NCBI GenBank assembly: GCA_002269645.1
Contig: NIVC01001877.1
Coordinates: 1 to 64,000, forward strand
Source: Macrostomum lignano
Lineage: Eukaryota
Length of the DNA: 64,000 bases
Direction: 5' to 3'
A program made the translations under genes and the position numbers. Below, piece after piece: positions 15,045 to 64,000 of the stretch (within the stretch, counting starts at the first letter, position 1; every line of letters begins with the position of its first letter). The notes under the pieces are model-generated. The model saw only the letters and a program-made list of their open reading frames with translations, did no database searches and was not told the DNA's origin.

Positions 15045-15087
<43 letters not shown>

Positions 15088-15124
15088 TACACAGACAGAC
15101 ACACAGACATACACAGACAGACAC

Positions 15125-15155
<31 letters not shown>

Positions 15156-15192
15156 TACACAGACAGACACACAGACATACACAGACAGACAC

Positions 15193-15223
<31 letters not shown>

Positions 15224-15236
15224 CACAGACAGACAC

Positions 15237-15267
<31 letters not shown>

Positions 15268-39340: not shown

Positions 39341-40147
39341 CTTGGATTTGCACTTTTGCAGCTAACAGTTGCACTGAAGGTCACATCTTTCTCTGTTTTT
39401 GAGGATCCAGCGCGAGAAAATGCGCATCACGCATCATTATTCTAAAAGAAACAATTTATTAGAAATCTATTTATATTTTTGCCTAATAAGGCACTACTGC
39501 TATCTGCTACATTTTCTGCACACCAGTACTTCTTCTGTCTGAATAATCTTCAATATAACGATAATGTCACCAAAAAGACAAGTTAGCAAAAAAAATTTTT
39601 TGCTACAATGAGTAGTTTAGAATGTTTGATAAAGCAAGTAACGTAATTGAGTCAATAAAGAAAAGGGCCGTTGTTAATCTGCGATGAGATCGGTTAGTGG
39701 GCTTGGCTTTCCGTCCGACAAACCCTCATCATTCTTACCTGCTCATTGCTGCGACAGCGAAACAATTAATGATGGTTAATTGAAAGGCACTAGAACGGCC
39801 ACTGAAATAGGTTTGGGCATCAATCATGGCTTCCATTTTTTCATCTGAATTGATTATTAATCAGCTCGTCTACATGTATATGATTGTGCGCGACCGTTTG
39901 CTTGATTTCCCTATTCAAATCAATCAATCACTTTGTATAGTTGTTACCTCTCAGGTAGGCATTGTGTTAGAAGCACCACTCAAATGTGCATGCTGTATGT
40001 GCGTGACTCCCGTGAGAAGCCACACAGCTAGCCAATCAATTTCATACAAACCCTTTGTTTGGACAGACTCCATATTTATAACAAAAGTAGGCTGAATTTC
40101 TCTTGAGAACCGAGGCATACCAAAGCAGAACTAGCTGACAGTCAAAC

Positions 40148-41452
40148 ATGAAACCAACTCTGTTTGCTATTTTCGTCACACTATTGCTGACAGCGGCTGG
40201 TGTCCAGGGACAGCAGGACTTCGAGGGTGAACTTGACACGTATTTAAAGAACAACATCAGCTATTTCAGTCCGAATCTGTTGCCAAGAATTAACAAGGAC
40301 AAGGTCATTCAAATCGTAATGGACTCGCTTCTGTGTCAGATTGTGTCTGTGGACACGGCAAAGCAGAGCATAAAAATATCAGCAATCATTCAGGCTGTGT
40401 GGGAGGAGGATCGACTGGTTTGGGATCCGAAGAAGTTTGGCGGCGTGAAAGTGATTAACCGGGACGCGTCAGAGATCTGGTTTCCCGTCATAATAGTTTA
40501 TAATGGAATCGGAGATGGGCAGCTCCTTGAGCCGCAGATGCCGGTAGATCTTTTGTCGACAACAGTGAACAGTACGCAAGTTACTGCAATGTGGCGTCGC
40601 GAGTTCGAATTCGCCTGCCAATTTGACGTGTCAAAATTCCCTTGGGATCAGCACGACTGCGAGTTGGAGTTCTTCTTCAGCGACCAGGGGCACGGAAATT
40701 CGATGGTTATTCCAATAGCGAAGACCAATTACCCATTCAATATAAAGGCGCTATACACAGAGAGCAGCGAGTGGACATTAGTGAATGCATCCTCAAAAGC
40801 TGAATATAGGGCTTACAATTTGATTCGCGGAGTAGCTGCGAAGCAAATGCTCCCATCTTATATCATCAAGGTGCAGTTTAAAAGAGTTTCAACGTACTAT
40901 TTGATAAGCGTAATCACTCCGCTGTTGCTGTTGACTCTGCTTCAAGTGCTGGTGTACTTTGTACCACTCGAATCCGGCGAGAAACTGGGATTCGGCATCA
41001 CAATCATGCTCAGTTATACCGTGTTTCTGCTGCTTCTGGACGGCATCCTGCCGAAGTCGCAGTCAACACCAGCTATTGCATCGTTCATCACGTCTGCCAT
41101 GATCCTGTCAACGGTGTCACTGCTGTTAACTTCGCTAATCATGCGATTTCACTACGCTCCGGAGGGCACCAAGATGCCCGCATGCGCCCGAGGCTTCTTT
41201 GTCCGATTCCTTGGACGCGTGTTCTGCGTGAACGGCTCGTCCAGTGCGCAGGTCGGTGAGACTCCGACTGCTGACGCAGCGGCAAGCGAGTCCAGTGTGC
41301 GCAAGATGGACGACTCAGCTCCCGTGGTGAAGTCGGAATGGATTGTGGCTTCCTACGCGATTGAGAGGCTGATGGTGGGTCTGGGAGTTTTCGCCACAGC
41401 TGCAATCATCGGAGTGTTTGTTTTGAAACCCATGATTCAAAATCAAGACTAA
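40148..41452 (+). CDS. Intronless Cys-loop ligand-gated ion channel subunit 2, 434 aa
   Basis: Signal peptide, Cys loop CQFDVSKFPWDQHDC, four TM helices, same M2 as subunit 1. Confidence 0.95.
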   Translation: MKPTLFAIFVTLLLTAAGVQGQQDFEGELDTYLKNNISYFSPNLLPRINKDKVIQIVMDSLLCQIVSVDTAKQSIKISAIIQAVWEEDRLVWDPKKFGGVKVINRDASEIWFPVIIVYNGIGDGQLLEPQMPVDLLSTTVNSTQVTAMWRREFEFACQFDVSKFPWDQHDCELEFFFSDQGHGNSMVIPIAKTNYPFNIKALYTESSEWTLVNASSKAEYRAYNLIRGVAAKQMLPSYIIKVQFKRVSTYYLISVITPLLLLTLLQVLVYFVPLESGEKLGFGITIMLSYTVFLLLLDGILPKSQSTPAIASFITSAMILSTVSLLLTSLIMRFHYAPEGTKMPACARGFFVRFLGRVFCVNGSSSAQVGETPTADAAASESSVRKMDDSAPVVKSEWIVASYAIERLMVGLGVFATAAIIGVFVLKPMIQNQD

Positions 41453-42975: not shown

Positions 42976-43326
42976 GGTAACGATCGGTATAATTGTTATT
43001 TCTAAACCATTTCTGCTCTTTTTTCTTCAACATCTAACACAGATTTATCCATTAAGCTTGCACGAGCTATATTCCATAGCTTTGCTGAGAAAGGAATATT
43101 ATTAATCAAACTAAATAATTTATCAGAGACTCATCAAATATCTCGGTAGTAATTTAATGACACTGGCGCTGCATTACGTTCTTGTGTCAATAGCGATAAA
43201 AGCCGTCTCTATCTGTCCAATAAAATAAAAGCAGCGAACGGATTCTCAGGCGATCTTTGAGCCTAACCTGTAACTGGTCGGGCTGAAACGGCATTAGGAC
43301 TATTTTAGCAGACATACCAGTTGTCT

Positions 43327-44643
43327 ATGCGATCAGCAATGCACTGCAGAATGAGACAAAAAATGTTATTCTCGTTCATCCTGCTGGTTTCGGTCTTAGC
43401 CTCGACACTAGCTACTGATTACGATGTCCTGCTAATGCAGCACCTGAACAACAAAGTTGCAAACTACAGCCAATTTATTTTGCCAATACTAAACAAGACA
43501 AACAAAGTCAACGTGTCGTTAGACATCATGGTCAGCCATTTAGTCTCAGTGGACACTGCCAAGCAGAACATCAAAATCGCTGCCTACGTTCAAGTCAGCT
43601 GGGAAGAGGAGCGACTCGTGTGGAATCCTGCCGACTTTGGTGGCGTCAGTTCTACTAGCTGGGACCCTGCAAAAATTTGGTACCCAATCATCATGACATA
43701 CAACGGTAACGGCGATGAACAGATTCTGATTCCTCGAATCCGACTTACACTGATGTCTAAGAGTTCAAGCGTGACGACGGTTACTTCATCCTGGCGCCGG
43801 GAGTTCGAATTTTTTTGCCAATTCAACATGTCCGACTTTCCGTACGACCAGCACACTTGCGAGCTGCTGTTCTTCCTTGCAACTGACGCCAATCCTGATG
43901 CAGTGCGGCCTGTTCGCAGCGCAATGCCCATGCGGGTGACAGGAATCTACAAGCCTAGCAACGAGTGGATATTGAAAAATGCAGTAGCAGATTGGGAAAC
44001 CAAAAAATATTTTATAATCGAAGGACACAATGAGACCGAACTTTCGACCTTTGTTCTGCGATTGCACTTGAAGCGAGTGTCAACGTACTATTTCATCAAC
44101 ATCATCACGCCTTTGTTGCTCCTAACTTTGCTTCAAGTGCTAGTGTACTTTCTGCCCCTGGAGTCCGGTGAGAAGCTGGGATTCGGCATCACAATCATGC
44201 TCAGCTACACCGTGTTCTTGCTGCTTCTGGACGGAATCCTGCCGAAGTCGCACAAGATGCCCGCCATCGCCCTGTTCATCACGGCCGCCATGATGCTGTC
44301 TACCGTGTCGCTGCTGCTGACATCGCTGGTCATGCTGTTCCACTTCAGACCGGAGGGCAGCCGCATGCCGAAATGCGCTCGGACGGTCTTTGTTCGATGC
44401 CTGGGCCGCCTTCTCTGCGTCAGCGGCGCCACAGCGTCACAGGTGGGCCAGCAGAATCCGGCTGAGGCTGAGGGCGACGGCGACGGAGTTCAGAAACCGC
44501 CTGCAGCGGAACAGAAATCGGTCGGTTCAGACTGGGTGGTGGCCGCCCGCGCGATCGAGAGATTCTTGTCGCTGTTCGGAGTGGTTGCTACCGCCGTCAT
44601 AATTGTAGTCTTTCTGATGGGGCCGTATCTTCAGTTTTCTTAA
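43327..44643 (+). CDS. Intronless Cys-loop ligand-gated ion channel subunit 3 (start may be 43351 or 43363)
   Basis: Signal peptide, Cys loop CQFNMSDFPYDQHTC, four TM helices, same M2 as subunits 1 and 2. Confidence 0.95.
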   Translation: MRSAMHCRMRQKMLFSFILLVSVLASTLATDYDVLLMQHLNNKVANYSQFILPILNKTNKVNVSLDIMVSHLVSVDTAKQNIKIAAYVQVSWEEERLVWNPADFGGVSSTSWDPAKIWYPIIMTYNGNGDEQILIPRIRLTLMSKSSSVTTVTSSWRREFEFFCQFNMSDFPYDQHTCELLFFLATDANPDAVRPVRSAMPMRVTGIYKPSNEWILKNAVADWETKKYFIIEGHNETELSTFVLRLHLKRVSTYYFINIITPLLLLTLLQVLVYFLPLESGEKLGFGITIMLSYTVFLLLLDGILPKSHKMPAIALFITAAMMLSTVSLLLTSLVMLFHFRPEGSRMPKCARTVFVRCLGRLLCVSGATASQVGQQNPAEAEGDGDGVQKPPAAEQKSVGSDWVVAARAIERFLSLFGVVATAVIIVVFLMGPYLQFS

Positions 44644-45882: not shown

Positions 45883-46775
45883 GAAATCTTCGGGACTTTA
45901 GAGCCTTCCGAACTGGCAAAAGAAATCGGCCAGAATTCGAAATCAAATCAGAATTCAAGCTTCCATTTAAACTCGTACTGTTAAAAAAATTATCCCTTAA
46001 AAAAGTTTTTTTGAGGGCAGAGAAGCAGGAATTACAGATCCAAATTGTATGTGTAACATGTAAATATTAGACAGGCGAATTATAATTACATCAATTTTTT
46101 CCAGAAAAAACATGAATAGCTACAAAAAATTCGTAAAAATACATTTTAGAGCTACAAAGTCCGAAGTCCATGAGATTTTCGTGCAGTGCATTTAGCCGTG
46201 TGCCAGATTTTGTCTGAATCGCGTTGGCCCCCAATTCTTTGTGAGTCTTACTAAAGAGAGATTCACCCACTAAAAACGTTCCGGTAGTGACTGCATATTA
46301 AATTCATGCTTTTGTTGTGGGAGAGGTTTTCATTTCTATATACATGTAGGGGTACATTTACATCGGTCAGCCATCAATACATGCATATACCATGTCGCCT
46401 TGTTCCCTATAGCTCTTTTCTAAGAATCGATGGCAATTATTGGGCTCATACATGTTGGTCTTAATACCACCTTTTCCACACAATGACGTTTCCTTATCGA
46501 CTGTTTAATTCCACGGTCGGAGCACGAAAGCGGCCTGATGCAAACACCAATGTGGGGGAACGAGGCACGCAAGCCCCATAAAACCCTGTAGACTTGGGAC
46601 AATAAAAACGAATTTTAAGGGAAAAGCGATCGCCATTATGAATAAAGATAAAAGAAACCACAGAAGATAAAAAATTGGCTCTGCGCAAACAGACAAGGCG
46701 AGCCAACACAACGCGAGAAGACCTTAAAACCAGATCGGGGGGAGGTGGATGCGCACGGGGCAGAGGGACGAGAGA

Positions 46776-47100
46776 GAGTCGCAAAAGTGGCAAAAGTTGC
46801 CTGCCATCGCCCTGTTCATCACGGCCGCCATGGTGCTGTCCACCGTGTCGCTGCTGCTGACATCGCTGGTCATGCTGTTCCACTTCAGGCTGGAGGGCAG
46901 CCGCATGCCGGGATGTACTCGGGCTGTCTTTGTTCGATGCCTGGTGGGCCGACTGCTCTGCGTCAGTACCGTAACGTCACCACGTCACCAACGTCACCAC
47001 GATTCGGACATGAGTCGTCGCGGCACGCGCAATTGAGCGGATTATTTCGCTGTTCGGAGTGGTTGCTACTGCTGCCATCATCGGCTTGTTTTTACTGTAG
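46776..47100 (+). pseudogene. Truncated fourth Cys-loop receptor copy (M3 to M4 only), closest to subunit 3
   Basis: PAIALFITAAMVLSTVSLLLTSLVMLFHFRLEGSRMP, then after a frameshift RAIERIISLFGVVATAAII. No extracellular domain, M1 or M2 is seen upstream. Confidence 0.88.
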
Positions 47101-48797: not shown

Positions 48798-51700
48798 ATG
48801 CCTCTTTTCGGTAAGAAAAAGAAAGATGGCAATAAAGAAAGCCCTACGCACGCTCAGCCTTCCCGCGATGCAACACAAACTTCAAATGCAACCCACAAAC
48901 AAGCTGGTGCAGTACCAGGAAGTGCAGATGAAAGCCCAGAGTCGCAAAGGCCACAATATAATTTTCATTGTCAACTGGCTCATGGAAGCCCCACAGGAAT
49001 AATTAGTGGCTTTACAAACGTCAAAGAACTTTATGCAAAGATTGCAGAGTGTTATAACATCGAACCTTCTGAGGTAATTCTGATATCAATTTTCTTATGT
49101 TGTTATGATATCTTTAAATTGCTTCCTTGAATTATGGATGAAAATAATTTTTTTACCTAATATTTCTATTTAAAACAGTAGTTTTGTGGTTTAGGATAAA
49201 AACAAAAGCTTTCACTTGCTTTCTTTGCTCTTCTCTAATTTTATTTTGTGCTTTTTTACCCTAGACAGGGAATTAAATATTATTAATATTATTATTAATA
49301 AGTATTTAATTCATTAATTTATAAATATGTTTATTAATAAAAGTATAATTAGTAACAAAAAAAAGTTTATAATGTTTTTTTCTAAAAACCTTTAAGAAAA
49401 TAGGCCTAGGTTTTTGAAACTTAGTTTAAATTTTCTTCTTATAATTTTTTATGCTTTTAGTTTTGATAATATCAACTTTAAATAAAAAGTGATTATATAA
49501 AAGCCACACTTTAAAGGTTACTCACTGTTACTGGTACACAGGAAATTTCTGGCATATGTTGTAGGGCTCTTTCTTCTCTGGTTAATAATCCCACTGCTTA
49601 GCTACCAAGTTGTCGTGGGGGAGGGGAGTTTATCCTTTTGCTGACACCAAATTGTTACAGGGTTTACCGGGGATTTTAGGGAGTTTCTCAGGATTTGGGG
49701 CGAACTGCACAATTTATACTACTAACAGGAGTAAGCCATAGGTTGTTCCTGGTGGCGTGGTGTGTCCGAGCGGCAAGACACAATTTCCTATTCTTAGTCC
49801 GGGGAATATAGATGGGAGAGGAAATTAACGGCTTCGCGATGGATCAGAGTTACCTGGGAAAATTGCACTAATGGGGAATTTCTAAACACTAATAGGGAAT
49901 GCTGACATGAGTAGACTGACCGTATAATACAGCATTAGATAAGAAGGCAATCTGCCTAATGAATGTGGGAAATTTCTACAAGGAAGGGTTGGGGGCGGGG
50001 ATGCCGGGGGAGACTGTACGTCTGAGGGAATAAGGCTGTACACCTGAGCAGACAGACTGTCCACTAGAAAGGGGGAGGGGCAGGAGCGGCGGGTGCAAGT
50101 TCCGCTGGGAGAAAGGGAAGAGGCAAAACTTGGGGGTAGGACCGAACGTCCCGGGGAAGGGGAGAGAAGTTTTAAACACTTCTAACTGTACAAGCTTCGC
50201 AGGAGAAGAAAGGCGGAACGCCTTTAAATGACTAAGACGGAGCTATTTTTAGAACAATGTTCAGTTACAACTGCTAAATAACTAGACTAGCGGAGGTCTC
50301 AGCAAACGAAGCAGGAAGTTATTTTCTTTCTTGATATATTTTCTTGCTTATATAGGATTTGCTAACAAAATGGCGGACGCATTTAAACTAATAAAGCACT
50401 AGATTATACGGTAGGCCACTAATCGAAACTAATAATTACTACTAATGATATAAAATATTTATTTATGTAGGCACTGATAATTTCTTGTAGTTTTAGAAAA
50501 ATAGTCGTATTTATATGTGAAATCAATGGACAAAATAGACAAAATTAGGCAAATAGGCAAAATAATAGGCAACTGTTACACATACTAGTGAATAGTTTAA
50601 CTGTTTTTGCATAAACCACTTTGGCATACCACTTTCAACTCAAGTAAATTTTTGGCACACAAACTTATACTCATCAAAACTTCAAAACTTTTATAAATAC
50701 AAAATTACATGTTGCAATAATTTTATTCTTTTAAATTACATGCACTATGAAATTTGAAAAAAAACTTTATTTTTATGTACAATTGTTACAAATTTTGGCT
50801 TTTTCCAAATTTTATAGGAAAGTTTTTAGCAAAGTCAATAGCATTTTATTTCAAATTTCATAGCCACAAATATGGTTTTTTATTGTCACAATTGCAAAAA
50901 GGTCCTTTATTGTTTTATTAATTTTTTACCATATTATTACAAAAGAGTCTTTTTTCTAGTATACCATGCTGTACCATCTAAACTATAGTATAAAAGCTTT
51001 TATATTTATTAAAATAGTTAGTGATTCATTGCATTTATTCAATTTATAGATTATGAATTCATAACCTTTGAAATTAAGCTTCTGTAATAATCATATATTT
51101 TTGTTATAGTTTTAAACATTTTGCTTCACTGAATAACCATTTTCTTTTTGTGTATATATTGAGTTCATTCTGCATGACATTAGCTATCCTTGCCTATCAA
51201 AATCTTTGCTATCTCTTTATATTATAGAAATTATTCCTTAATCATGCTGCCTAATCATTATTAGTATAAATCTATCAGTAGAACTTACCTCTTCATTTTA
51301 ATGTGTATAGAAAATACAAATCTTATCATTACTAGTAGTAACATGATGATAAAGTGAATATTATTATTAGGAACTAAATATTTTGTTCCATATATTTGTA
51401 ATTGTCCCTGTAGTATAATATTTTTGTGTAAAATATTGTCAGCATTTTCAATAAGTTTACCATAAAATACAGGCAAATATACCAAGAGGAAAGTCAACCC
51501 TCGTGCAGGCTATAACTTGTGCTGCCTTGTCATTAGGCATCAGTGCCGCCTATATTCTTAAAATAGCAGTTGAGTTAGCCTTATTCATTTTGAGACATGC
51601 AGTCTCCTCCCTCTCCCTTCCTATTGAAAGCATATTGCCTTCTTACCCTACTAGGCTTATTATTCCTATATTAGGCATCTTGCCTCCTTACCCTACTAGG

Positions 51701-53650
51701 CTTACTGCCTAGATATCCTGCCTACTTGTCCTCATTAGGCATATTGCCTACTTACTCCATTAGGTTTCTTGCTTAATTTCCCTTATTGGTCATACTGCCT
51801 TCTTATTTTCCCTTTTCCTATTAGGCACCCTATCTCCCTATGCCAAGCATTCCCTATTAGCTATTGAAATTCCCCATTAGTGCACCCCATTTCCCAAGCA
51901 ACTCTAATCCATTGTGTAGCCCTTCTTCTCCCTCTCTCCCTTCTCTTTCCCTGGACTGATTAGACAGTGTCTTGCCACTCGGACACTATGCCGCCAGGAG
52001 TTTCCTCTGGCTTACTCCTTCTAGTAGTAGAATTTGAACATTTCTCCCCAAATCCCAAGAAATTCCCAGAACCCCCTGCAACAAATTAGTGACAGCTATG
52101 AAACTAATAAGTTAAAGAATCTTCCCCTAGAACTTACCCCATCACAGTTCTATTTCTTTTTGTTTTATCTTTTTTGATTGGTACCTCAAAGGTTTGTTTT
52201 TAGATATTTTAAGCATAAACTCATTTGTTATAACCTTGAATCTGTCACTCTGTATTAGGCCTACTAGAATATATCAGGGCTGTCCCAAAAGTAGTGTTAC
52301 TTTTTATTTTATATCTCATTCTAATGATCCAAATGATATAATTTATACAATTTAAGAGGCAACTCTCTTCTTTATATTAGAAATGATAAAAGTATTTTAA
52401 ATATAAATATATTATTATAGTACTATAAATATATGTATAATATATAATATGGAGAAGAGTTGCCACTATAAAATTGTGAGAAATGATGTGACTTTGATCA
52501 TCAGAATTAGAGATATAGCTAAAAGTAGCACTATTTTTGGATAGCACTCATAAGTATAAAAAATGTTTTATTATAAAAAGTTTTATAATATATATAGCTG
52601 TATCTTAGTTCATTTTAATTTAATTTTTTAAATGCTGTTTTGTTTTTGGGCACATAAAAGGGTGGCAGACAAAACAACTATATATCTATAGGTTACCAAG
52701 ATTAGAGGCTCATGGCATGCAAAAAACAGTCTTGATATATTTTATATATATATCAAGTATACTTATATATCTGAAAATCACATTTCCCAACATTTCACTT
52801 TTTGCTTGCAACAATGCTTAAACATTTTCATCTAGCAGAGCTGATGAATGAAAATCAATTTATAAATTTATAGAAATTTATAGCAAAAGTTATCTCTAGA
52901 TATATTTTGAGCATTAAAAACAAATATATATTATTATTATAAACAAATATATATATATATAAAGCATATACAGTATTTATAAAATGCTAGTGCTGCTCAC
53001 CTGTATGGAGTGGAACAGAAACACGGAATAAAAGAAATTTCTCTTTTTAAACCCAATGCCAGATAATTTTCTGCACGCTGAACACGCACAAGATCGATAT
53101 GGACCGTCTGCTTGGCGGTCAGATTGGCCTAGACGATTTTCTCTTTGCTCACGTGAAAGGCCAGAAAAAAGAGGTGGAGGTCATAAAGTCTGACGACGCT
53201 CTCGGACTGACCATCACTGACAATGGCGCCGGCTTCGCTTTTATCAAACGAATTAAACCGGACTCTGTTGCTGACCAAGTTGAGCACATTCTGCCAGGCG
53301 ATCACATTGAAAAGATCGACGGCGAGAGCTTTGTTGGTGAGCTGACTGACTGACTGACTGACTGACTGACTGACTCACTGACTCACTGACTGACTCACTG
53401 ACTGACTGACTGACTGACTGACTGACTGACTGACTGACTGACTGACTGACTCACTGACTCACTGACTCACTGACTCACTGACTCACTGACTGACTGACTG
53501 ACTAACTGACTGACTCATTGACTGACTGACTGACTGACTGACTGACTGACTGACTGACTGACTGACTGACTGACTGACTGACTGACTGACTGACTGACTG
53601 ACTGACTGACTGACTGACTCACTGACTCACTCACTCTGACTCACTGACTC

Positions 53651-53683
<33 letters not shown>

Positions 53684-55083
53684 GAGTGAGTTTGTGACTT
53701 GAGTGAGTGAGTGATGGAATGGGTGATCACAAATAGTGGATTATTTGTGCAATTGATCTGAGTGACTGATAGACTGAGTAACTTGAATGAGTGACTTGGG
53801 TGACTAAGTTGAGTGACCTGAGTGACTGGGTTGACTGAGTTGAGTGACCTGAGTGACTGGGTTGACTGAGTTGAGTGACCTGAGTGACTGGGTTGACTGA
53901 GTTGAGTGACCTGAGTAACTGGGTGACTGAGTTGAGTGACCTGAGTGACTGACTCAATAGCGTCCAGTTCGCCGCAAAATCCGCAGGCAAGCGCCATTTC
54001 GACGTTGCCAAACGACTTAAAGAAATTCCTCGCGGCGCGACTTTTGTTCTGCGCCTCATCAGCCCGGAGAAGTCGCCCTACGCCAATTTGCAGCCCAGAG
54101 GCGGCTCCAGAGGTCACGCGGCCGGCGCTGGCGGCGGCCTTGGCAGCGGCAAGAAGACAATCCGGTTGAAGGCAAAGGTGAGCGAGTAGCTTTGCTTGTT
54201 TTTTTATTCTATCTATAATTACTCGTATCTTGAAGTTTTCTGTTGCTAGACAAACGTTTTCTCCCGATGCTTTTAAAAAGTGCTAAGATGTCCTTCTGTT
54301 GTTAAGGAAGTTTTGTTTCCGTTGTTAGACTATTCGACTTCCGTTGCTATTGTACTTCTTTCCGTTGCTAGGATGTTTAATTTTGTTCCTAGGGTATTTA
54401 TTTTCATTGCTAGGGTATTTCTTTCCGTTGCTAGGGTTTTTATTTCCCTTGTCAGGGGATGTATTTTCTTTGCTAAAACATGTTACTTCTTTCCGTTGCT
54501 ATGGTATCTCTTTTACGTTGCTATGGTATCTCTCCGTTGCTAGGGTATTTGCTTTTGTTGCTAGGGTATTTATTTTCGTTGCTAGGGTATTCATTTCCGT
54601 TGCCAGGGTATATATTTTCGTTGCTAAGGCTGTCTTTCCGTTGCTATGGTAGTACTTTCCGTTGCTAGGGTATTTAATTTGGTTGCTAGGGTGTTTATTT
54701 TCGTTGCTTAGGCGATGCAAGTCTTTTTCCGTGGATTTCCTCTCCAAACTCGTATCTAACCGTGTTTCCAGGGCGCCGCGGTCGAGGAGGACGCGCCGGA
54801 CCAGGCGGCTGACGTGGCCATCCAGGCCGTCAACCGCCTGATCGAAGGCCTGCTAGGCATCTCGGACGCCGAACTGGCGCAGAACATCTGGGAGCTCGGC
54901 CGGGAGATCGACAATCCGCACGACTTCGCCTTGGCCGTCGATCGGGATCTGGGCGAATTCGCCTTCCCAGACGGCTTAGTGTTCGACTTCTGGGGCGCAA
55001 TCAGCGACGCCAAGGCTGGCCGGTTGAAGTCTGCGACGCCTGACGACGGCGGCGGCACAGTGGAGTTCACGGAGGAGTTCTGA
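48798..55083 (+). CDS. GIPC: GIPC PDZ-domain adaptor, 350 aa; exons 48798-49073, 53063-53336, 53987-54177, 54772-55083
   Basis: [57 protein letters not shown] and GH2 [19 protein letters not shown] motifs. Intron phases 0, 1, 0 give a 1053-nt open frame. Confidence 0.96.
49630..52090. repeat. Diverged inverted repeat pair (arms about 49630-49980 and 51740-52090) in GIPC intron 1
   Basis: Blocks ggagtaagcca, gtgtccgag.ggcaagacac and gcactaatggggaatttc..ctaatagggaatgct occur as reverse complements in colinear order. Confidence 0.75.
52275..52549. mobile_element. MITE with about 100-bp imperfect terminal inverted repeats (Tc1/mariner-like CAGGG end)
   Basis: cagggctgtcccaaaagtagtgttacttttt..ggcaactct versus agagttgcc..aaaagtagcactatttttggatagcact. 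Confidence 0.7.
53343..53955. repeat. (GACT)n microsatellite grading into a gagtgacctgagtgactgggttgactgagtt repeat, GIPC intron 2
   Basis: Directly visible. Confidence 0.95.
54330..54710. repeat. Degenerate about 21-bp repeat (ttccgttgctagggtattt) in GIPC intron 3
   Basis: About 17 degenerate copies. Confidence 0.88.
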
Positions 55084-56229
55084 AGCTGACAGTCATCTTA
55101 CTATTGGTTTGCATGTGTTATTTCTGGTAGTTTCTATGGCTACGGAGCTGTTATGAATATGCATGGGTTTCCATGGATACGGCGTTGCTATTACTACTTA
55201 TAGCTACGGGGTTACTATGGTTACTTGGTCGTTTTTAATATGAGGTTGCTAATGGCTACGGAGTATCCGTATCTACAGACTTTTAATATAAACAGGTATA
55301 TGTGTGTACAAAAAGGTTGCTATGGAAACCGTTATTTTGCCGTAGCCACAGATACTAGAATAGCTGGATGGGCCACTCAGCACATTTGCGTGTAAACTAC
55401 TTTCAGTTCAGTAGCAAATTAAACAGAAGCATTTTAATGTACTTTTTAAGTAAAGGTTCATTTATTGGCTCTTAACACCCCCCCCCCCCAGCTTAAACCC
55501 TCCAACCGCGCCTTTCCCACTACCCCCCGCCCCGCCCCAATTTTTTATTGCCTTTCTCGGAATTCCAGCCTAAAGCTGCCATGTACATTTCAGTGGACTG
55601 GCCAATGTACATTATTGCTGAACCAATTAGCAAGTTGTTCACCCGCCTGCAAGCTTGGGCTTTTTAAACTTATCAAAGTCGTTTCAGCTGGCTTTATTTT
55701 TATAAAATAGCTTATGTATTCTTCTTTGCTACTGAATTGAAAGTAGAAAGCTGTTTTAATAAGTATATATGCCTGAGTGGCCCAACTAGTTATTTTAGTG
55801 TCTGTGACCGTAGCAAAACTAGAAAGAATTTTTCATAGTTAATCAGGCAGATATGCTCCGGAATCTCGAGTGCGGACGATGGTGGAGATTTAATTTTACT
55901 CTCTTACGCCTGGCGTTCTTTCTGCTTTATGGAACTTTGTATTCTAGATTAATGGCTCATTATGCAAACTAGCTAGTTAATAATAGTTAACAGATTTTTA
56001 TCATCTGAGACTGGGTGCACGAACCCAGGACCACGCGACATTCCGCCAACTTGGCATTCCACACTGCTTAGTATGTTCTTTTATTTGTTCGTGTAAAGAT
56101 CCACAAGTATAGTTTACTTTGTTTTAAATGATGCCAACATTTAGAAATCTGTGGCACCAATTCAAACTCAATTTAAAAAAAACTTCATAATTCTTATTCT
56201 GGCGCTAGTTTAAAATTTGTTGCTGTCAA

Positions 56230-56430
56230 CTTTAAAACCAGTGGCGCCAATTGCAAAATTAATGGCGCCAATTTCAAAACAAATGGCGCCAGTTTCAAAA
56301 TCAATGGCGCCAGTTTCAAAATCAATGGCGCCAATTTCAAAATCAATGGCGCCAATTTCAAAATCAATGGCGCCAGTTTTATAATTAATCGCGCCAATTT
56401 TAAAACTGATAGCGCTAGTTTCAAAATCAA
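56230..56430. repeat. 21-bp repeat (tggcgccaatttcaaaatcaa)
   Basis: About nine degenerate copies. Confidence 0.88.
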
Positions 56431-57267
56431 TTACGCTAATTTTTATTAATCAGTCAACCTGGAAGTTGGTGACTGTGTAATCATCACCTGCTGGATCTAT
56501 GCATGTTAATATAGATGTGCTGCTAACTTTAACTAAATCCTTTCATTTGTTAGAGAATTTAGCTTTAAGTCCGAGAAATATTTATATTTATGAATTCTTG
56601 CAAGTCTTTGTGTGATGTACGTATAAGGTATATCATTTTATTCGCCCGTAATTGTGATATTCTCTGTTTGTGTGACTTTCTTTAAATCGGCCGTATTGAT
56701 TTCATTTTTTTAAAGTCTTTTAATTATGACTTTGTAATTTCTGCCCAGATTTTATAAAGTAGCTTACTGGATGCTTACAAACATCTACTTTATTACAAGT
56801 ATAAATGGGTATTGATTAAAACAAAATAAAATAAATTTGATATTTATTGGTGCACAATTTTACATTCCTAGTACTGTAAGTAGTGTACATGTGGATACAC
56901 TATATGCTACATTTATTTATACATGCTGATGCCATTAAAAGGCCACGCGCATATTTTAGTCCAGACATTCCTGTATGTTTTATAAACTCAATTGTTTGAT
57001 CATGAAATGCTAATATTAAAAATACTGTTTTATCGTTACATTCTTTACGCACAGTGGATTAGACATTATTACTATAATTATTATGCAGCGGTTATGTCTA
57101 TCAACGCACAATCCACCTATCCACATGTTATTGTTCATTTTTGTTTTGCCTCATAATATTGTGTGTCTTCATTTTCGTAAAGTATTGTAATTTTCATGTT
57201 TATGTATTTTGTAACTGGCCATGTCTTATGTCTTATATATATGTGCATGTAACAAATAAGCATTCAC

Positions 57268-57655
57268 AAAGGGCGTCGCCACGGGGGGCATGTCCCCCCC
57301 CCATAGTAAAAACTATGGGGGGACATGCCAATGCTTTGTCCACCCCACCCCACCTTGTGACCTGTTATGAAAGTCAATAATTTTGCTTCAGAGCGACAAA
57401 ATGAGTGCCTGCGGTACCAAAATGAGTGCCTGCGGTACCAAAATGAGTGCTTGCGGTGCCAAAATGAGTGCCTGCGGTACCAAAATGAGTGCCTGCGGTG
57501 CCAAAATGAGTGCTTGCGGTACCAAAATGAGTGCTTGCGGTGCCAAAATGAGTGCTTGCGGCGCCAAAATTATGTACATGCATGAATTTAATCATGTAAA
57601 TGTAGAATTCTTGGCTTTGCCCCCCCCCACTATAAAATCCATGGCAACGCCCCTG
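57268..57655 (+). mobile_element. hAT-like MITE with an internal 21-bp tandem array
   Basis: Ends aaagggcgtcgcc / ggcaacgcccctg are imperfect inverted repeats; the flanking 8-mers gcattcac / gcatgtac match at 6 of 8; internal unit aaaatgagtgcctgcggtacc. Confidence 0.7.
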
Positions 57656-58149
57656 GCATGTACTCAACAATACTTCTATATTTGTTGTTTGGTTTTTTAT
57701 GTTAGTTGCTTATATCGTGTGGGCACAGTTTTTGTGCATCAATTTTTCTTGCTGCTCTTTCTACACAATAATATACTGAGATTATACAGTTAAACGGAAG
57801 CACTTTCCATATTAGTGGAATAAACTGCAAATCTATTAAGGAATTTATAAAAAAGATCACTATAGAAAATGGGTTTATTTTTCTACAATTCATGATTGCA
57901 ATGATTGCATGGATGAAATGACAGAAGCTGAGAGAACAATTGAAGAGCTGGGAGACACATGTCTGCGCGTACCCCACAACTTGACGGTCCTTCTGGCCAT
58001 GCGCACCATATGCATGCGTATTGTAACATTTACAAATTTAACGAATTCAATTGCGTGCCAGGGTGCATGGGCCTAATTAAAAGATGGACCCTCGCAGCTT
58101 GGACGGCCTGACACCACCAACCAGGAGAAAGTTGTTGCTGTTGACAAGC

Positions 58150-59400
58150 TCCTTGTTGGATTGAAAAATCTGTGTCAAAGTTCTAATTTCAGCGTCAAGC
58201 GTTATTCATGTACTACAAACTGAGTACGCGCGATGCAGCATGCACTTAATCAGACCAATCTTCCACTGTGTAGGACAAAGGGCATTGAAATTAAGGATTA
58301 GGCCAGTAAATGTTGGTTTTCGGTAAACATTTGTGCTGACGCAGCCATTGTTCAAGTCGACTTCAGTGTCAAGAAACGGTATTCTTTTTCCTCCGCAGTT
58401 TCGACAGTGAATTTGATTCTTTTGTGTGTTGAATTTAGTGCTTGAAGAAATTCCAGATATTTGGCTTGGTTATCAAACACAGCAAACGTATCACCGACGT
58501 AGTACCGCTTGTAGAAAGCAGGGGCGCAGTCAAGCGCCATCCATTTCTTTTCCCAGTGAGCCATACAAATATTTGCGAGTGTTGGAGCAAGAGGCTAGGA
58601 CTCCCCATCGCACATCCATCAATTTGGCGGTAGTATAGTTGCCTTCAAATATGAAAATTCCTGAGGTTGCATAGCCCAAGAGTTTTTTAAAGACTTCTCT
58701 AGGCATTGAGGTGGATTGGATTGATACACCTGCTCAGTGGCCAGATCGATGGCTAGCTTTAAAGGGATATTGGTGAAGAGTAGTGAAGTGACATCAAAGC
58801 TGCACACAAAGTCGGCGTGACTCGGCTTGAACTGATTGAGCGCCTGCAGAAATTCCGAGTTGGACCGAACTAAAAATTCACCAGATATGCAAGGCTTGAT
58901 CAGAGAATCAATTAATTTAGCAAGTTCATATTCAGCAGTGTTCATCATTGAGATAATTGGCCTCAGGGGCTTATCTTCCTTATGCACTTTACACAGCCCC
59001 AAACAATATAGTTGATCTGGCTGACTCCCACTTTTGGCATATACGTTTGAATACTTCTTCACTTAGATGATTCTTGGCATGGGTTCTCAGATAAGTCTGT
59101 AACAATCTTTCGGCCTTAAGCACGGGGTGGGCCATGGTATAACTCCATTCACGTCATTTAAGCGTTGGAATCTAGTCTCATGGTCATTAATGATCCCAAA
59201 AAGTTTGTTGACATAGTCATCCGTGTCCATAACCAGCAACACCATATCCTTTATCATAGCCAACAATCTTGATCCTCTTATTATCCCGAAGCTGTTTCAT
59301 TGTCCGATGAAACAGCTTCGGGATGAAACAGCAGCAAGAGCATGTTTCATTGCTCTTGCTGCTTCATACTTGACTTTACAACGAGAACCCAGCGACGAAT
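58150..59400 (-). mobile_element. Degenerate Penelope-like element, reverse transcriptase region
   Basis: Minus strand reads DKG..VMD..DY, KVHKEDKPLRPIIS, SFDVTSLLFTNIP, GCAMGSP, RYYVGDTF (corrupted YVDD), IKFTVE, PFLD, VYRKPTFTG and HRAYSVCS, with several frameshifts and stops. Confidence 0.9.
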
Positions 59401-61811
59401 CAATACTCATGTAACTCGGGATGAGTGCTTGAATATACATGTATGTAGTGTACGTGCGCTGTATGGGATATATATCTACATAGCTGTACCATTTATGTAC
59501 TTGGATGACCCAGAGTCTAACGAGATTCCATAAAGTGGCGGAAGGGCCCAGGTTCAAAAAGCCGAAAAAAGTGGTGATGTTAACAAAGAAGTCTAAATTG
59601 CCACCGAGCAGTACAAGTCTCTTATTATTGCTAGTTCCCCAATTAGTAAAATATATAGCATTGTGTCTGCAAACTGAAAAGCCTTCAAAAATTGATTCGC
59701 AGAAACATGAATAGGCCCTACTTCGCCGAAATGTCGCGCACGCACAGCCACAAAAAACTCCTAGAGAAATTAACTGAAAGTTGTATTTAACGTATAAAAA
59801 CATTCCTTTATTTTTAACTGAGTACTTATAGACACGGCGGCAATGTCTATCCTATAATGTTGGAGCTTATAGACAGGCACGTCCACTATGTCTATAATGT
59901 TAAGCACAGATTTTGGCAATAAAGAGATGGCTGCCGTCCCAGACTTCAGTGTCAAGTCAACATCAAATCAAATTATAACAGAGATTATATTCCGCCACCC
60001 TCTGTGTCTAAGACTCTAAGTCACGTTACTAAGTGTGCATGAACCCATTCAAGACTATCCTATCTTAAAGACTATCCTAGGCCTATTTGATGCCATTAGT
60101 TGTCCTAACTCCTACCTAGGGCTAAATCTCTACTTTCTTAGAATTGGTCTGAGTTATATTAGCCTATTCTTAGCATCTTGGGAGTATTTGTCTAACTCTA
60201 ACTCTAAGTATTTATCTTAAGTATTTGTCTGAGTATTTATATGTAGGAGTATTTTTAGTGTTCTTATTTAGTTCTAATACTAATACTAATAGCATTATAT
60301 GTAAATGGCCTAAGTAGTATATTACTGTTATTACTACTAGTAACAGTAGGTCTATATTTACTGCATATGCAACATACATGATATATATAATATATTTTAC
60401 TTGGAACACTTATCAATTGATAACTTTGTTATTAATTGCCTCAAACCATAATAGGCAAGGACAAGGTTGGTTCTCCTTTTAAAAAATTATATCTATTTAA
60501 ACTAGGCCAATTTTAGACTTTAGTTCATTTAAAACAAAAAAATAAGTTTCAAAAATATTTTAGGAATAAATAAGAAGAAGAAATTTAAAAAGAAATATTT
60601 TTAGTTTTTGTACAGATTTAAAATTAGATAGGAAGATTCTTGACTTTACCAGTCCTATATTAGATATACTTAATTGATAAAATTTTTATTATTTTTACTT
60701 TTCAAATAGGTTAGGATAGGTTAGCTTTGTTGCCTCTCATATATATGCAACCTCCAAAATTCAGTTGGCTGTGCAACTTAGTTTTAACAAAAAATACAAT
60801 CTAGTTTTTGGCCAAAAATGGAACTTATATATAAAAGAAACCCTAAAGCAAAATTAATGCAACTTTGGATAAATGGCAATAGTAACTATGACTGTCTTAT
60901 TAAGGCAAAATGCTTCATTATCTACAAAGTACTACTTTAGTATTTATTCAGCTAGGCATTTTTGCAACTTACCTTGGTTGGCTACCAAATTGGTTGGCTA
61001 GATTGGCTAACTTAGCCGACTGTTACATATGTATGTTGTCTCTAGTCAAGAAACAACTTCTTTTATGCTAAATTATATCTACTATAAGAAGAAAAAAGAA
61101 CTAAAAGTACTAATTATAATAAAAATAGTTTCTTTATAGTCCCCTATGACCTTTGCATTTTATACCTATGTCCTATTGCTGCCAATGGCCATTATTGTAG
61201 TCAGGTTTTTTGGGCCATGTGGGTTTTTTGGCCCCTTCAAAATCTCATTGGTAATTGGATTTTTGGTATCAGCATCCAATCTTGCAACTTCATTTTCCCC
61301 ATGCTAGTTGCCAATTTCAAAAAAAGATTTTGTAAGTAAAAAAATTATATAAATCAATATGATAGAATTGTTTGTTTGCTATTGTTTGCAGCATTAAGCA
61401 GTAATCTTAGAGTTGAAAACAAATTTCTGCTTTTCAAATGCAGCCTTAGGTATATCTATCCTTGAGAATTTGGCTTTTTACCATTGGGCAACTGAAAATA
61501 GCCATTGGCAACTGGATTTTGAGCCCCAAAAGCCAGCTGGCAACTGGATTTCCAACCTTAAAAAAACCCAGATCTAGCATGGATTGGCCCTCGGTAATGC
61601 AGGCATTGTCTGGCACAATTAGGCATAGGAAAGGGGATGTCCAATGCAGTTTAGACCTTGGTTGCAATAGGGTGCCTAAGGCTGACTTTATAGTTATTAT
61701 TGTAGAGATTTAGGTTATTTTGGCTAGGCCTATATTTGATTTATTATCATCAATAGATAAAGGGATAAAAAGCTCAAACATGACTTACTGATAATAGAAA
61801 TTGTTTAAATA

Positions 61812-62000
61812 AAAAGTTTCATATGTGCGCAACCTGGGAATCACCTGGCCATTTCTATTGGCAACACACACATATAAGTCGCTATTGGCTGAGAGCAGTC
61901 ACATGACTGCTATTCTGTCCAATAGCGACATAACATGTGTGTGTTGTCAATAGAAACGGCCAAGTTAATCCCAAGGTTGCACCCAAGCATGAAAAGTTTT
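61812..62000. repeat. About 190-bp imperfect palindrome (fold-back MITE-like)
   Basis: gcaacc..ggcc.tttctattg.caacacacacat..gtcgctattgg pairs with ccaatagcgac..atgtgtgtgttgtcaatagaaacggcc..ggttgc; centre gcagtcacatgactgc. Confidence 0.85.
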
Positions 62001-62666
62001 ATCAAAACAAAGTTTTTAGACAAAAATGGTATATTGCCTAATACTAAGTATAAACTAAAATTTTGAAGATCTAAGAAGTTTTGTAACTTTTTTAATAATT
62101 TACCAGTTTAAAAAGTTTTAAGGTTTGTTTAATACCTACCATTTTCATATTTAAATTTAAATTTAAAAAAGCAAAAGCAAAAAAAGCAAAATTTAAATCA
62201 TACTGAGGTAAGGCAGCATGCTTCAGAAGGCAAATGAAAATAATGTGAAAATCGACACAGATTAAGTTAGATAAAATTCTTTCAACGCATTTCAGTCCAA
62301 CCAGGGCCATTTTCAGTGTCTGATGTATCTTTCACTCAATGCAACAACTTTTATAAGAGATAAATAGAGAACAAATGTTTACTGTACAGGCCAAGGGCAT
62401 ATCAGGGGCAGATGGTTCAATGTAAGTGAGCAGAGATTGCGAGTACAATGATTGGGTTTGTGCCTTTGCTTAGAATACCTTGAGTAAATGGCCCGCACCA
62501 CTGTGAGAAAGTTAAATATTTAGATTTGGTTTCGGGTTTTTAATGTACAATACATGGATTCGAGTCTATCGAGTCTAAAGTATAATTATTAGACTGCGTC
62601 AGTTTAGCCTTCTGGGGTCGAAATAATAAAATATGTCATCAATGCGACCCTGTCACGTGCCCGCAG

Positions 62667-64000
62667 TCGGACATCACATTCAAAAAGGTCAAGCGGTCAA
62701 TCCGCGTCAAACAGCCTGCCGTGGTGGTTCCAAAGCCGTCATCCTTGGCTGACGGCAGCGACTCAGACAATGACAGCGAGAAAGATCCGCCTGCGACTGC
62801 TGCACCATCGAATTCAAAGTCGAATTCTTTTAAGCATCAGCAGGCCAAGTCCTCAAAGTCGGCCGACCTGCCAACCCTGACCGCTTCGGCCTCCGCTCTG
62901 TCCTTTCAAGACGATCTGATTGCCGACGGCGGTGAAGAATTTCGCGTGAAAAAGTCCAGCAATAGCAGGAAGTTGGCTAAACGCCAGAGGCTCAGATACG
63001 ATAAGGAGGCTGCGGCTGCTGCTGCTGCTGCTGATACCGCTGCTTACTCAGGAAATAGTGGCGGCGCTGGCCCAGGCTCATCCGCTGCAGACGAAATTCA
63101 AGAAGTTGAAATGGAAGACGACTATCCGGTGTCCGTGCAGCAGCTTCGGTCGCAGGTTTTTTTACTGGGCTGTTGATTTTTTGTGTTCTTCAGTCCGCAA
63201 CGTCCACCTCACTTCTGTGTCCTTCAGTCCGCAACGTCCACCTCACCTCTGTGTCCTTCAGTCCGCAACGTCCACCTCACCTCTGTGTCCTTCAGTCCGC
63301 AATGTCTACCTCACCTCTGTGTTCTTCAGTCCGCAATGTCTACCTCACCTCGTGTCCTTCAGTCCGCAATGTCCACCTCACCTCTGTGTCCATCAGTCCG
63401 CAATGCCACCCTCTGTCTGTGTCCTTCAGTCCCGCAATTCCACTCTCTGCCTGTGTCCATCAGTCCGCAATGCCACCCTCTGTCTGTGTCTTTCAGTCCG
63501 CAATGCCCCATCAACCATGTGTCCTTAAAAAGTGCGGCTGGCAGTCTGCCAAAAGTACACACAAATTCTATATAAAAGAGCCATAAAATCCGCAGATTGC
63601 CAGCCAGGGCATTCCGGACAGCCGCACCGTCTATCAGCTGAAGCTGCAGCGCCAATTGGCTGCTCGGGCCCGACGCGCCAACCAAGCCGGCGCCAGCGAC
63701 AACGACAGCCCAGGCCGACCGGCAGACGATGACACTAACAGCGGCTTCGGCGGCGGCGACGACTCCGACGTTGCCGACGTTCTCGACGACGACAACGGTG
63801 ACGGCAGCGGCGGCGGAGTTCGGGTTCGCCTTCTCGGCACCCTGCGGCCGGAGGCTGAGCGACGCATGATGCGGGACCAGTTCCTGGCTGCCGAGCACGG
63901 CTCGCCTCCCCGATCATTTTTAAACGAGCGATCGGCAAACGACAACTACGACGACGACTATGATGACGACGACGGATTTCCTGGCGGCGGCGGCTCAGAG
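62667..64000 (+). CDS. PAXBP1: PAXBP1/GCFC family protein, 5' part; exons 62667-63155 and 63596 to beyond the window end
   Basis: LSFQDD..EEFRVKKSSNSRKLAK and GIPDSRTVY..K..RQLA match the PAXBP1/GCFC N-terminal motifs. Phase-0 GT-AG intron. No in-frame ATG upstream of the first acceptor. GCFC2 cannot be excluded. Confidence 0.8.
63185..63510. repeat. 34-bp minisatellite (tcagtccgcaacgtccacctcacctctgtgtcct) in the PAXBP1 intron
   Basis: About 9-10 copies. Confidence 0.94.

What the first reader, a model, noticed from the sequence alone, without database searches (positions are those of the whole stretch)
62583..62720. PAXBP1 has no local start codon; the spliced leader AUG would supply it exactly in frame
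Seen: the frame opens after TAA at 62583 with no ATG before the acceptor CCCGCAG|TCG (62666/62667). The exon begins SDITFKKVKR, matching the extreme N-terminus of PAXBP1 (human MFRKARR), so only the Met is missing. The nearby ATGs at 62633 and 62642 are out of frame. Established: all flatworm spliced leaders end in AUG, and it can serve as initiator. Inference: translation of this splicing factor depends obligately on trans-splicing, a possible feedback link.
Basis: partly seen in the sequence, partly recalled or inferred. Interest (0 to 1): 0.7.

Follow-up and report, generated by a model that had tools for sequence, protein, structure and literature searches.

The report
Flatworm PAXBP1 start codon from spliced leader
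The flatworm Macrostomum lignano's PAXBP1 gene has no start codon of its own in its first coding exon and most likely borrows the AUG at the end of the trans-spliced leader, a mechanism already described in flatworms, so this is a probable new example, not a new principle.

Summary
The window is the first 64 kb of Macrostomum lignano scaffold NIVC01001877.1. The gene is the PAXBP1 orthologue. Its first coding exon starts at the acceptor CCCGCAG|TCG (62666|62667) in phase 0. An in-frame TAA lies 28 codons upstream, with no in-frame ATG between. The next in-frame ATG is codon 149.

The published M. lignano spliced leader ends ...TTGCATG. Joining it gives MSDITFKKVKR, which fits orthologue N-termini such as MSTLFKKPRR and MATMFKKPKR. 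All eight public gene models, from three genomic copies, lack a Met and start 0-12 nt after this acceptor. None has an upstream exon.

So leader-supplied initiation is the best explanation (about 0.68). No leader-junction read could be examined here.

A rival turned up: a five-codon mini-exon, ATGGCCCGCACCACT|GTGAGA (62488-62502). It has a good Kozak context and a consensus donor, is in phase, and is kept in all three copies.

"Obligate" dependence and a "feedback link" are not supported. Leader-AUG initiation is known (Cheng et al. 2006) and has been noted for Macrostomum. Verdict: a new member of a known kind, of low to moderate interest.

The parts
62583..62585 (+). In-frame stop codon TAA that closes the PAXBP1 frame 28 codons upstream of the acceptor
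62586..62666 (+). Last 81 nt before the acceptor (3' end of the presumed outron). It has no in-frame ATG, two out-of-frame ATGs at 62633 and 62642, and an in-frame near-cognate ACG at 62655, which is ATG in paralogue L001.
62660..62666 (+). 3' splice acceptor CCCGCAG, the presumed spliced-leader acceptor. It is invariant in all three genomic copies. Its hexamer CCGCAG does not match the commonest published trans-splice motif [T/C]TNCAG.
62667..63155 (+). First genomic coding exon of PAXBP1 (163 codons, phase 0 at both ends). It begins SDITFKKVKRSIRVKQ and ends QQLRSQ, followed by the donor GTTTTT.
   Evidence: public models P0001, P0002, P0003, P0005 and P0050 start at 62667; NCBI model P0047 starts at 62679
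63111..63113 (+). First in-frame ATG inside the exon (codon 149). Starting here would delete the conserved N-terminal motifs.
63156..63595 (+). Intron 1, containing a 34-nt tandem array of about 10 copies at 63182-63526
63596..64000 (+). Exon 2 of PAXBP1 (IASQGIPDSRTVYQLK...). It runs past the window end, to about 64273 on the scaffold.
62488..62508 (+). Rival feature: candidate cis mini-exon ATG GCC CGC ACC ACT (62488-62502; A at -3, G at +4) followed by the consensus donor GTGAGA (62503-62508). Splicing it to 62667 would give MARTT+SDITFKK across a 164-nt intron.
62026..62034 (+). The donor is poor, and the site lies in a window-specific insertion (61197-62182) absent from the paralogue.

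Best explanation
The PAXBP1 pre-mRNA of Macrostomum lignano is most likely trans-spliced at the acceptor 62666|62667. The outron, with its out-of-frame AUGs, is discarded. The spliced leader (...CAAUUUAUUGCAUG) is joined directly to UCG GAC AUC. The leader supplies the cap, a 32-nt 5'UTR and its 3'-terminal AUG, which is the first AUG of the mature mRNA and is in frame. Translation then yields MSDITFKKVKRSIRVKQ..., the full-length protein.

Shown here: the frame, stop, acceptor and lack of a local ATG; the gene's identity; the leader sequence (from the literature); and that no public gene model contains a Met or an upstream exon.

Inferred: that trans-splicing happens at this site, and that ribosomes start at the leader AUG.
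For: 1. Sequence: TAA at 62583, no in-frame ATG before the acceptor, phase-0 exon, next in-frame ATG at codon 149.
2. The M. lignano leader is CGGTCTCTTACTGCGAAGACTCAATTTATTGCATG. Its only ATG is its last three bases. The leaders of M. cliftonense and M. hystrix also end in ATG, which their authors call the included start codon.
3. Five UniRef models from at least two gene copies start exactly at S of the acceptor: P0001, P0002 (A0A1I8FP94), P0003 (A0A1I8GS21), P0005 and P0050 (A0A1I8JAJ2). Three RNA-seq-guided NCBI models start 3 or 12 nt after it. None has a Met or an upstream exon.
4. Paralogue L001 has an in-frame ATG 12 nt before the acceptor, yet its model P0048 starts at D, after the acceptor. 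That transcript model therefore does not extend upstream.
5. Orthologues begin M + 0-3 residues + F-K/R-K (MSTLFKK, MATMFKK, MSLFKK, MFKK). M+SDIT+FKK fits better than MARTTSDIT+FKK.
6. Prior: 30% of genes are trans-spliced. With 69.9% of trans-spliced and 36.9% of other genes conserved, P(trans-spliced | conserved gene) is about 0.45 (my calculation).
7. Leader-AUG initiation is documented in Schistosoma mansoni: the leader AUG is in frame in 28% of trans-spliced mRNAs, and more than 40 cDNAs need it (Cheng et al. 2006, as reported).
Against: - No leader-junction read or cDNA was available. The public collections searched do not even hold this exon.
- The acceptor hexamer CCGCAG does not match the top trans-splice motif [T/C]TNCAG, found at 44% of sites.
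- A phase-0 mini-exon with ATG (A at -3, G at +4) and a GTGAG donor lies 164 nt upstream and is kept in all three copies.
- Leader acceptors in parasitic flatworms often also accept cis exons.
- The NCBI models on this scaffold are fragmentary. The GIPC model starts 15 nt after an ordinary cis acceptor and lacks exon 1. A 5'-partial model is therefore not proof of trans-splicing.
- The leader AUG has a weak context: U at -3 and U at +4 (read from the sequence).
Confidence: 0.68

Rival explanations
1. A short cis-spliced first exon supplies the start codon. Transcription would start somewhere in 62200-62480. Exon 1 would end ...GAGTAA ATG GCC CGC ACC ACT|GTGAGA (62488-62502) and be spliced across a 164-nt intron to 62667, giving MARTTSDITFKK. 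It could be the only 5' end, or an alternative to the spliced leader at a shared acceptor.
For: - It is the only ATG...phase-0...GT[AG]AG candidate in the 7.5 kb between GIPC and the acceptor.
- The Kozak context is good: A at -3 and G at +4.
- The donor matches the M. lignano consensus GT[G/A]AG.
- The ATG, the length and the donor are kept in all three copies (MARTT, MAHTT, MAHAT). The indels in the paralogue (5 nt and 2 nt) fall only downstream of the donor.
- Sharing of leader acceptors with cis-splicing is common in parasitic flatworms.
- Very short first exons are easily lost by transcript aligners (my inference).
Against: - None of the eight gene models from two annotation efforts contains it.
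- Shuffled sequence gives 3.3 +/- 2.2 such candidates per 7.5 kb, so its existence is not above chance.
- Both substitutions in the paralogue change amino acids, and the surrounding non-coding DNA is equally conserved, at about 94%.
- It would give 9 residues before the F-K-K motif, against 0-3 in the orthologues.
Confidence: 0.2
2. One reading: an upstream exon ending ATG|GTATAT at 62026-62028 is cis-spliced to 62667.
For: ATG followed by GT exists at that position and would be in phase.
Against: - GTATAT departs from the GT[G/A]AG consensus and failed the strict scan.
- The site lies in an AT-rich insertion of about 0.9 kb (61197-62182). The insertion carries a MITE-like palindrome at 61801-62010 and is absent from paralogue L001, whose gene model has the same Met-less 5' end.
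Confidence: 0.02
3. No splicing at the 5' end. Translation starts on an unspliced leader at a non-AUG codon (ACG at 62655, which is ATG in paralogue L001), or further downstream at Met149 (63111).
For: - An in-frame ACG lies 12 nt before the acceptor, and the paralogue has ATG there.
- Met149 has a good context (G at -3, G at +4).
Against: - Two out-of-frame ATGs (62633, 62642) precede the ACG, and an out-of-frame ATG (62770) precedes Met149.
- The gene models stop at the acceptor even in L001, where an ATG is available.
- Starting at Met149 would delete the conserved F-K-K-x-K-R and LSFQDD...FRVKKS motifs.
Confidence: 0.05
4. A more distant or non-consensus upstream cis exon supplies the ATG. 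It might lie within the 7.6-kb interval after GIPC and have been missed by the annotations because of repeats and near-identical gene copies.
For: - About 35% of M. lignano donors lack the GT[G/A]AG motif.
- A relaxed scan gives 76 phase-compatible candidates.
- The annotation on this scaffold demonstrably misses GIPC exon 1.
Against: - No model in any of the three copies shows such an exon.
- Homology between the paralogues ends about 485 nt upstream of the acceptor, so a shared distant exon is unlikely.
Confidence: 0.05

Closest known systems
[quoted passage not shown]
   Same: The flatworm leader ends in AUG. The acceptor sits directly before an ORF that lacks its own start codon. The leader AUG is in frame and is needed for the full-length conserved protein.
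   Different: The species is different (a free-living macrostomorph) and so is the gene. Here trans-splicing at the site and use of the AUG are inferred from the sequence and from gene-model ends, not shown by cDNA or translation assays.
slORFs: open reading frames created by spliced-leader addition (slORFfinder, Brief Bioinform 2023, PMC9851317)
   Same: The leader supplies the start codon of an ORF that is in frame with the main ORF.
   Different: slORFs were called from leader-containing reads plus ribosome footprints in nematodes, Oikopleura and trypanosomes, often with non-AUG starts. No such data were available here.
Macrostomum genome annotation practice (Wiberg et al., G3 2023, PMC10468722)
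   Same: The authors state that the Macrostomum leader probably includes the final ATG as a translation start codon. They left the ATG untrimmed to avoid annotation problems.
   Different: That is a general remark. It names no gene and does not cover PAXBP1. The M. lignano annotations (ML2, Mlig_3_7) appear to have trimmed the ATG, which leaves Met-less models like those seen here.
Shared cis/trans acceptor sites in parasitic flatworms (Mol Biol Evol 2025, PMC12582326)
   Same: [quoted passage not shown]
   Different: It has not been shown for M. lignano or for this site. Here both possible 5' partners would bring an in-frame AUG, which that study does not discuss.

Membership tests
Flatworm mRNAs initiated at the spliced-leader AUG | The organism trans-splices a leader whose last three bases are AUG | tested here: met
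   The window is 100% identical to M. lignano NIVC01001877.1. The published leader ends TTGCATG.
Flatworm mRNAs initiated at the spliced-leader AUG | An AG acceptor lies immediately before the first coding base, in phase 0, so that the leader AUG is in frame with no intervening stop | tested here: met
   CCCGCAG|TCG GAC. The in-silico join gives MSDITFKKVKRSIRVKQPAV in all copies.
Flatworm mRNAs initiated at the spliced-leader AUG | Leader-to-exon junction observed in transcripts | not testable with these tools
   No M. lignano RNA-seq or cDNA is reachable. Junction and exon patterns are absent from the metagenome collection, and nothing was found in paper supplements. Indirect only: eight Met-less models end at the acceptor.
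Flatworm mRNAs initiated at the spliced-leader AUG | No other AUG can give the full-length conserved protein (the leader AUG is required) | tested here: inconclusive
   There is no in-frame ATG from the upstream stop to codon 148. However, an in-phase mini-exon with ATG and a GTGAG donor exists 164 nt upstream.
Flatworm mRNAs initiated at the spliced-leader AUG | The protein N-terminus derives from the leader-encoded Met | not testable with these tools
   This needs N-terminal proteomics or ribosome profiling.
PAXBP1 / GCFC family (Ntr2 counterpart, partner of TFIP11 on the intron-lariat spliceosome) | GCFC domain (Pfam PF07842) | tested here: met
   P0003, a model of this gene, scores E = 1.1e-10. 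The domain is encoded beyond the window end.
PAXBP1 / GCFC family (Ntr2 counterpart, partner of TFIP11 on the intron-lariat spliceosome) | Closest relatives and solved structures are PAXBP1 rather than GCFC2 | tested here: met
   All named hits are PAX3- and PAX7-binding protein 1. In the PDB, 8RO2 chain PX (PAXBP1) scores E = 1.4e-48, against GCFC2 (9S2E) at 4e-43. The margin is modest.
PAXBP1 / GCFC family (Ntr2 counterpart, partner of TFIP11 on the intron-lariat spliceosome) | Conserved N-terminal basic motif F-[KR]-[KR]-x-x-[KR], then LSF..D/E...F+VKKS and G-IPD motifs | tested here: met
   Alignment of 11 N-termini: F5 and R13 are invariant, and K7 and R10 are conserved in at least 90%. 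LSFQDD, FRVKKS and QGIPD are present in exons 1-2.
Gene with a cis-spliced start-codon mini-exon | An upstream exon with ATG, in phase, with a consensus donor | tested here: met
   ATGGCCCGCACCACT|GTGAGA at 62488-62508. The number of such candidates is not above chance (3.3 +/- 2.2 per 7.5 kb in shuffles).
Gene with a cis-spliced start-codon mini-exon | The exon is present in transcript-based gene models | tested here: not met
   None of the eight models from three loci contains MARTT, MAHTT or MAHAT, or any Met.

The most novel reading that the evidence does not exclude
The acceptor at 62667 may be a dual-input site. Both the spliced leader and a conserved cis mini-exon (62488-62502) end in phase 0 and each brings its own AUG. 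PAXBP1 would then be made whichever way the 5' end is processed, with two N-termini (MSDITF... or MARTTSDITF...). The ratio of the two would report, or respond to, the balance between trans- and cis-splicing.
Probability: 0.1. Interest if true: 0.5.

Novelty: new member of a known kind. Interest (0 to 1): 0.27.

Why it matters
If confirmed, PAXBP1 joins the set of flatworm genes whose protein cannot be made without trans-splicing.

The practical value is for annotation. All eight public M. lignano models of this gene (UniProt and GenBank) are Met-less "fragments", most likely because the leader's ATG was trimmed. The same is probably true of many other M. lignano genes. Adding the leader AUG back would complete them.

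Biologically it is a routine case of a mechanism described in 2006. That the gene encodes a spliceosome-disassembly factor is a curiosity, not evidence of regulation: about a third of the genes in this species are trans-spliced.

Tried and rejected
- Exact look-ups of P0001, P0002 and P0003 for their contigs: not on record. The loci were reached only through cluster members P0047-P0049.
- Search for a spliced-leader gene or leader-like sequence in the window: none.
- PDB and Pfam searches with the N-terminal 298 aa alone: only low-complexity noise.
- Supplements of three papers searched for PAXBP1, GCFC or the scaffold name: nothing. No paper mentions PAXBP1 together with M. lignano.
- Wasik et al. 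2015 and Cheng et al. 2006 are not held. How the ML2 models were built is therefore my inference, and the Cheng figures are quoted second-hand.
- Metagenome scans for the leader-exon junction and for the exon alone: zero hits for both, so that collection is uninformative.
- Control for annotation behaviour: a GIPC search returned no M. lignano models, and a look-up of an ion-channel ORF was not on record. Both failed.
- The bacterial promoter/terminator scan is irrelevant for this eukaryote.
- Rejected: donor GTAAGTGAG at 62422. It is conserved, but it would put the ATG at 62412 out of frame, and the paralogue lacks that ATG.
- Rejected: an operon with GIPC as the explanation. The gap is 7.6 kb (8.2 kb in the paralogue), far above the published 1-kb repeat-adjusted threshold. 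I could not subtract repeats, so this stays open but is not needed.

Full report
**What is there**

Every coordinate in the finding is correct.
- TAA at 62583-62585 is in frame with TCG at 62667, and the 27 codons between contain no ATG.
- The acceptor reads CCCGCAG|TCG GAC ATC.
- The ATGs at 62633 and 62642 are both in frame +2 and open a 39-codon out-of-frame ORF.
- The exon translates to SDITFKKVKRSIRVKQ... and runs to 63155, where the donor is CAG|GTTTTT (phase 0).
- Intron 1 (63156-63595) carries a 34-nt tandem array.
- Exon 2 starts at 63596 and runs past the window end.
- After the acceptor, the first ATG in any frame is the out-of-frame one at 62770. The first in-frame ATG is at 63111, codon 149.

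These points rest.

None of the single features is beyond chance.
- P(no in-frame ATG in 27 shuffled codons) = 0.62.
- P(none in 148 shuffled exon codons) = 0.13.
- P(phase 0) = 1/3.

The case rests on the combination of these features with the homology and the gene models.

**Where the window comes from**

A protein search with the exon translation found only Macrostomum lignano entries. Cluster members led to three loci of assembly GCA_002269645.1 (Mlig_3_7).
- L003 (NIVC01001877.1, 52679-77721) is 100% identical to window 52679-64000. The window is therefore the first 64 kb of that scaffold.
- L002 (NIVC01002137.1) is a 99.6% identical allele or recent duplicate.
- L001 (NIVC01000059.1) is a paralogue of about 90% identity.

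GIPC lies upstream on the same strand in all three loci. Its stop is at 55083, which is 7.6 kb before the acceptor.

**Gene identity**

- Full-length models of this gene carry the GCFC domain (PF07842, E = 1.1e-10).
- All named homologues are "PAX3- and PAX7-binding protein 1".
- The best solved structure is human PAXBP1 in the intron-lariat spliceosome (8RO2 chain PX, E = 1.4e-48). GCFC2 is close behind at 4e-43.
- Recent cryo-EM papers describe PAXBP1 as the Ntr2 counterpart. It pairs with TFIP11 to recognise the spent spliceosome and guide DHX15.

Calling it a splicing factor is therefore justified.

Orthologue N-termini are MFRKARR, MFKKxxR, MSTLFKKPRR, MATMFKKPKR, MASMFRKPRR and MSLFKKPNR. 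The worm exon starts four residues before the invariant F. One added Met gives MSDITFKKVKR, close to the molluscan MSTLFKKPRR.

**The spliced leader**

The M. lignano leader is published as CGGTCTCTTACTGCGAAGACTCAATTTATTGCATG, or as a 44-nt version with the same 3' end. About 30-39% of genes receive it, and conserved genes are enriched among them. From the published fractions I calculate P(trans-spliced | conserved gene) of about 0.45.

The leaders of M. cliftonense and M. hystrix also end in ATG. Their authors call this the included start codon and chose not to trim it, to avoid annotation problems.

Use of the leader AUG as initiator was shown in Schistosoma mansoni by Cheng et al. 2006. [quoted passage not shown]

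Joining the leader to 62667 in silico puts the first AUG of the mRNA at nt 33, in frame, in all copies.

**Indirect transcript evidence**

Eight public protein models exist for this gene family in M. lignano.
- Five UniRef models, from at least two copies, begin exactly with S at the acceptor: P0001, P0002 (A0A1I8FP94), P0003 (A0A1I8GS21), P0005 and P0050 (A0A1I8JAJ2).
- Three GenBank models come from the RNA-seq-guided Mlig_3_7 annotation. They begin at D (3 nt after the acceptor, L001) or at F (12 nt after it, L002 and L003/window).
- None has a Met or an upstream exon.

The most telling case is L001. There the window's in-frame ACG (62655) is ATG, 12 nt before the acceptor, yet the model does not use it. 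That transcript model therefore does not extend upstream of the acceptor.

A 5' end that coincides with an AG| boundary in different copies is what a leader-bearing transcript gives once the leader, ATG included, is trimmed or cannot be aligned. This reading is my inference. I could not read the ML2 annotation methods.

One caution. On this same scaffold the GIPC model starts 15 nt after an ordinary cis acceptor and lacks its real exon 1, which is at 48798-49072 and begins MPLFGKKKK. Ragged 5'-partial models are therefore not proof of trans-splicing.

**Rivals**

I scanned the 7.5 kb between GIPC and the acceptor for an ATG followed by an open frame and, in phase 0, a GT[AG]AG donor. Exactly one candidate came out: ATG GCC CGC ACC ACT|GTGAGA at 62488-62508.
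- It has A at -3 and G at +4.
- It would leave a 164-nt intron and give MARTTSDITFKK.
- The ATG, the length and the donor are kept in all three copies (MARTT, MAHTT, MAHAT).
- The paralogue's indels (5 nt and 2 nt) fall only downstream of the donor.

Against it:
- Shuffles give 3.3 +/- 2.2 such candidates by chance.
- The flanking non-coding DNA is just as conserved.
- Both substitutions in the paralogue change amino acids.
- No gene model contains the exon.
- It would give an N-terminal extension longer than in any orthologue.

In parasitic flatworms an average of 66% of leader acceptor sites also show cis-splicing. Co-existence of the two 5' ends therefore cannot be excluded.

It also lies in an insertion of about 0.9 kb (61197-62182) that carries a MITE-like palindrome and is absent from paralogue L001.

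Initiation on an unspliced RNA, or at Met149, is disfavoured. Out-of-frame AUGs come first, and a start at Met149 would lose the conserved N-terminal motifs.

**Verdict**

The core interpretation, that the leader AUG supplies the initiator, is the best-supported explanation at about 0.68. The mini-exon follows at about 0.2, and the remaining rivals share about 0.12.

"Obligate" dependence and a "feedback link" have no support beyond the coincidence that the gene product acts on spliceosomes. With a third of all genes trans-spliced, that coincidence is expected for many splicing factors.

The mechanism is already known in flatworms and has been anticipated for Macrostomum, so this is a new member of a known kind. 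Its main practical value is to show why the public models of this gene, and probably of many others, are Met-less fragments.

Direct proof needs junction reads, which these tools could not reach.

Noticed in passing
window 48798-49072, 53063-53350, 54760-55083 (+): A GIPC (GH1-PDZ-GH2) gene lies upstream of PAXBP1 on the same strand, and this synteny is kept in all three copies. The GenBank model on this scaffold starts at 53078, 15 nt after the cis acceptor ccag|ATA, and lacks exon 1 (MPLFGKKKK...). That acceptor is also phase 0, so a leader AUG would be in frame there too.
   Followed up: partly
L001 9986-9988 (equivalent to window 62655-62657): The paralogous copy has ATG where the window has ACG. 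It is in frame, 12 nt before the acceptor, and looks like a CpG transition. The annotated CDS of that copy ignores it.
   Followed up: yes
window 61197-62182: An insertion of about 0.9 kb relative to paralogue L001. It contains a 210-nt imperfect palindrome (61801-62010, 79% self-complementary) that looks like a MITE.
   Followed up: partly
window 63182-63526: A tandem array of a 34-nt unit (about 10 copies, 85% matches) fills most of PAXBP1 intron 1.
   Followed up: no
window 56227-56442 and 57397-57570: Two 21-nt tandem arrays in the GIPC-PAXBP1 intergenic region.
   Followed up: no
window 38012-39337, 40139-41449, 43309-44640 (+); fragment around 46500-47100: Three tandem, apparently intron-less paralogues of a Cys-loop ligand-gated ion channel (Neur_chan_LBD plus Neur_chan_memb), and a fourth fragment. 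An exact look-up of the middle ORF found no matching annotated gene.
   Followed up: partly
window 2095-5897 (+): Two long GC-rich ORFs with WD40 propellers and a GEMI5 TPR domain, probably a Gemin5 orthologue.
   Followed up: no
window 1-1500: A purine-rich satellite on the + strand (GC skew 0.73, AT skew 0.65) at the scaffold end. It reads as RGEERRGEER in all + frames.
   Followed up: no
window 12400-15500: About 3 kb of low-complexity CAGA/CA-type repeats, open in several frames on both strands.
   Followed up: no
window 62849 / 63596 (protein P0001): One UniRef model flagged as window-encoded joins ...HQQAK to L-IASQGIPD. There is no GT donor after 62849, and the L codon cannot be derived from the genome at either boundary. 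It is probably a model artefact.
   Followed up: partly
window 29769-30491 (+): An exon encoding NHL repeats (six-bladed propeller).
   Followed up: no
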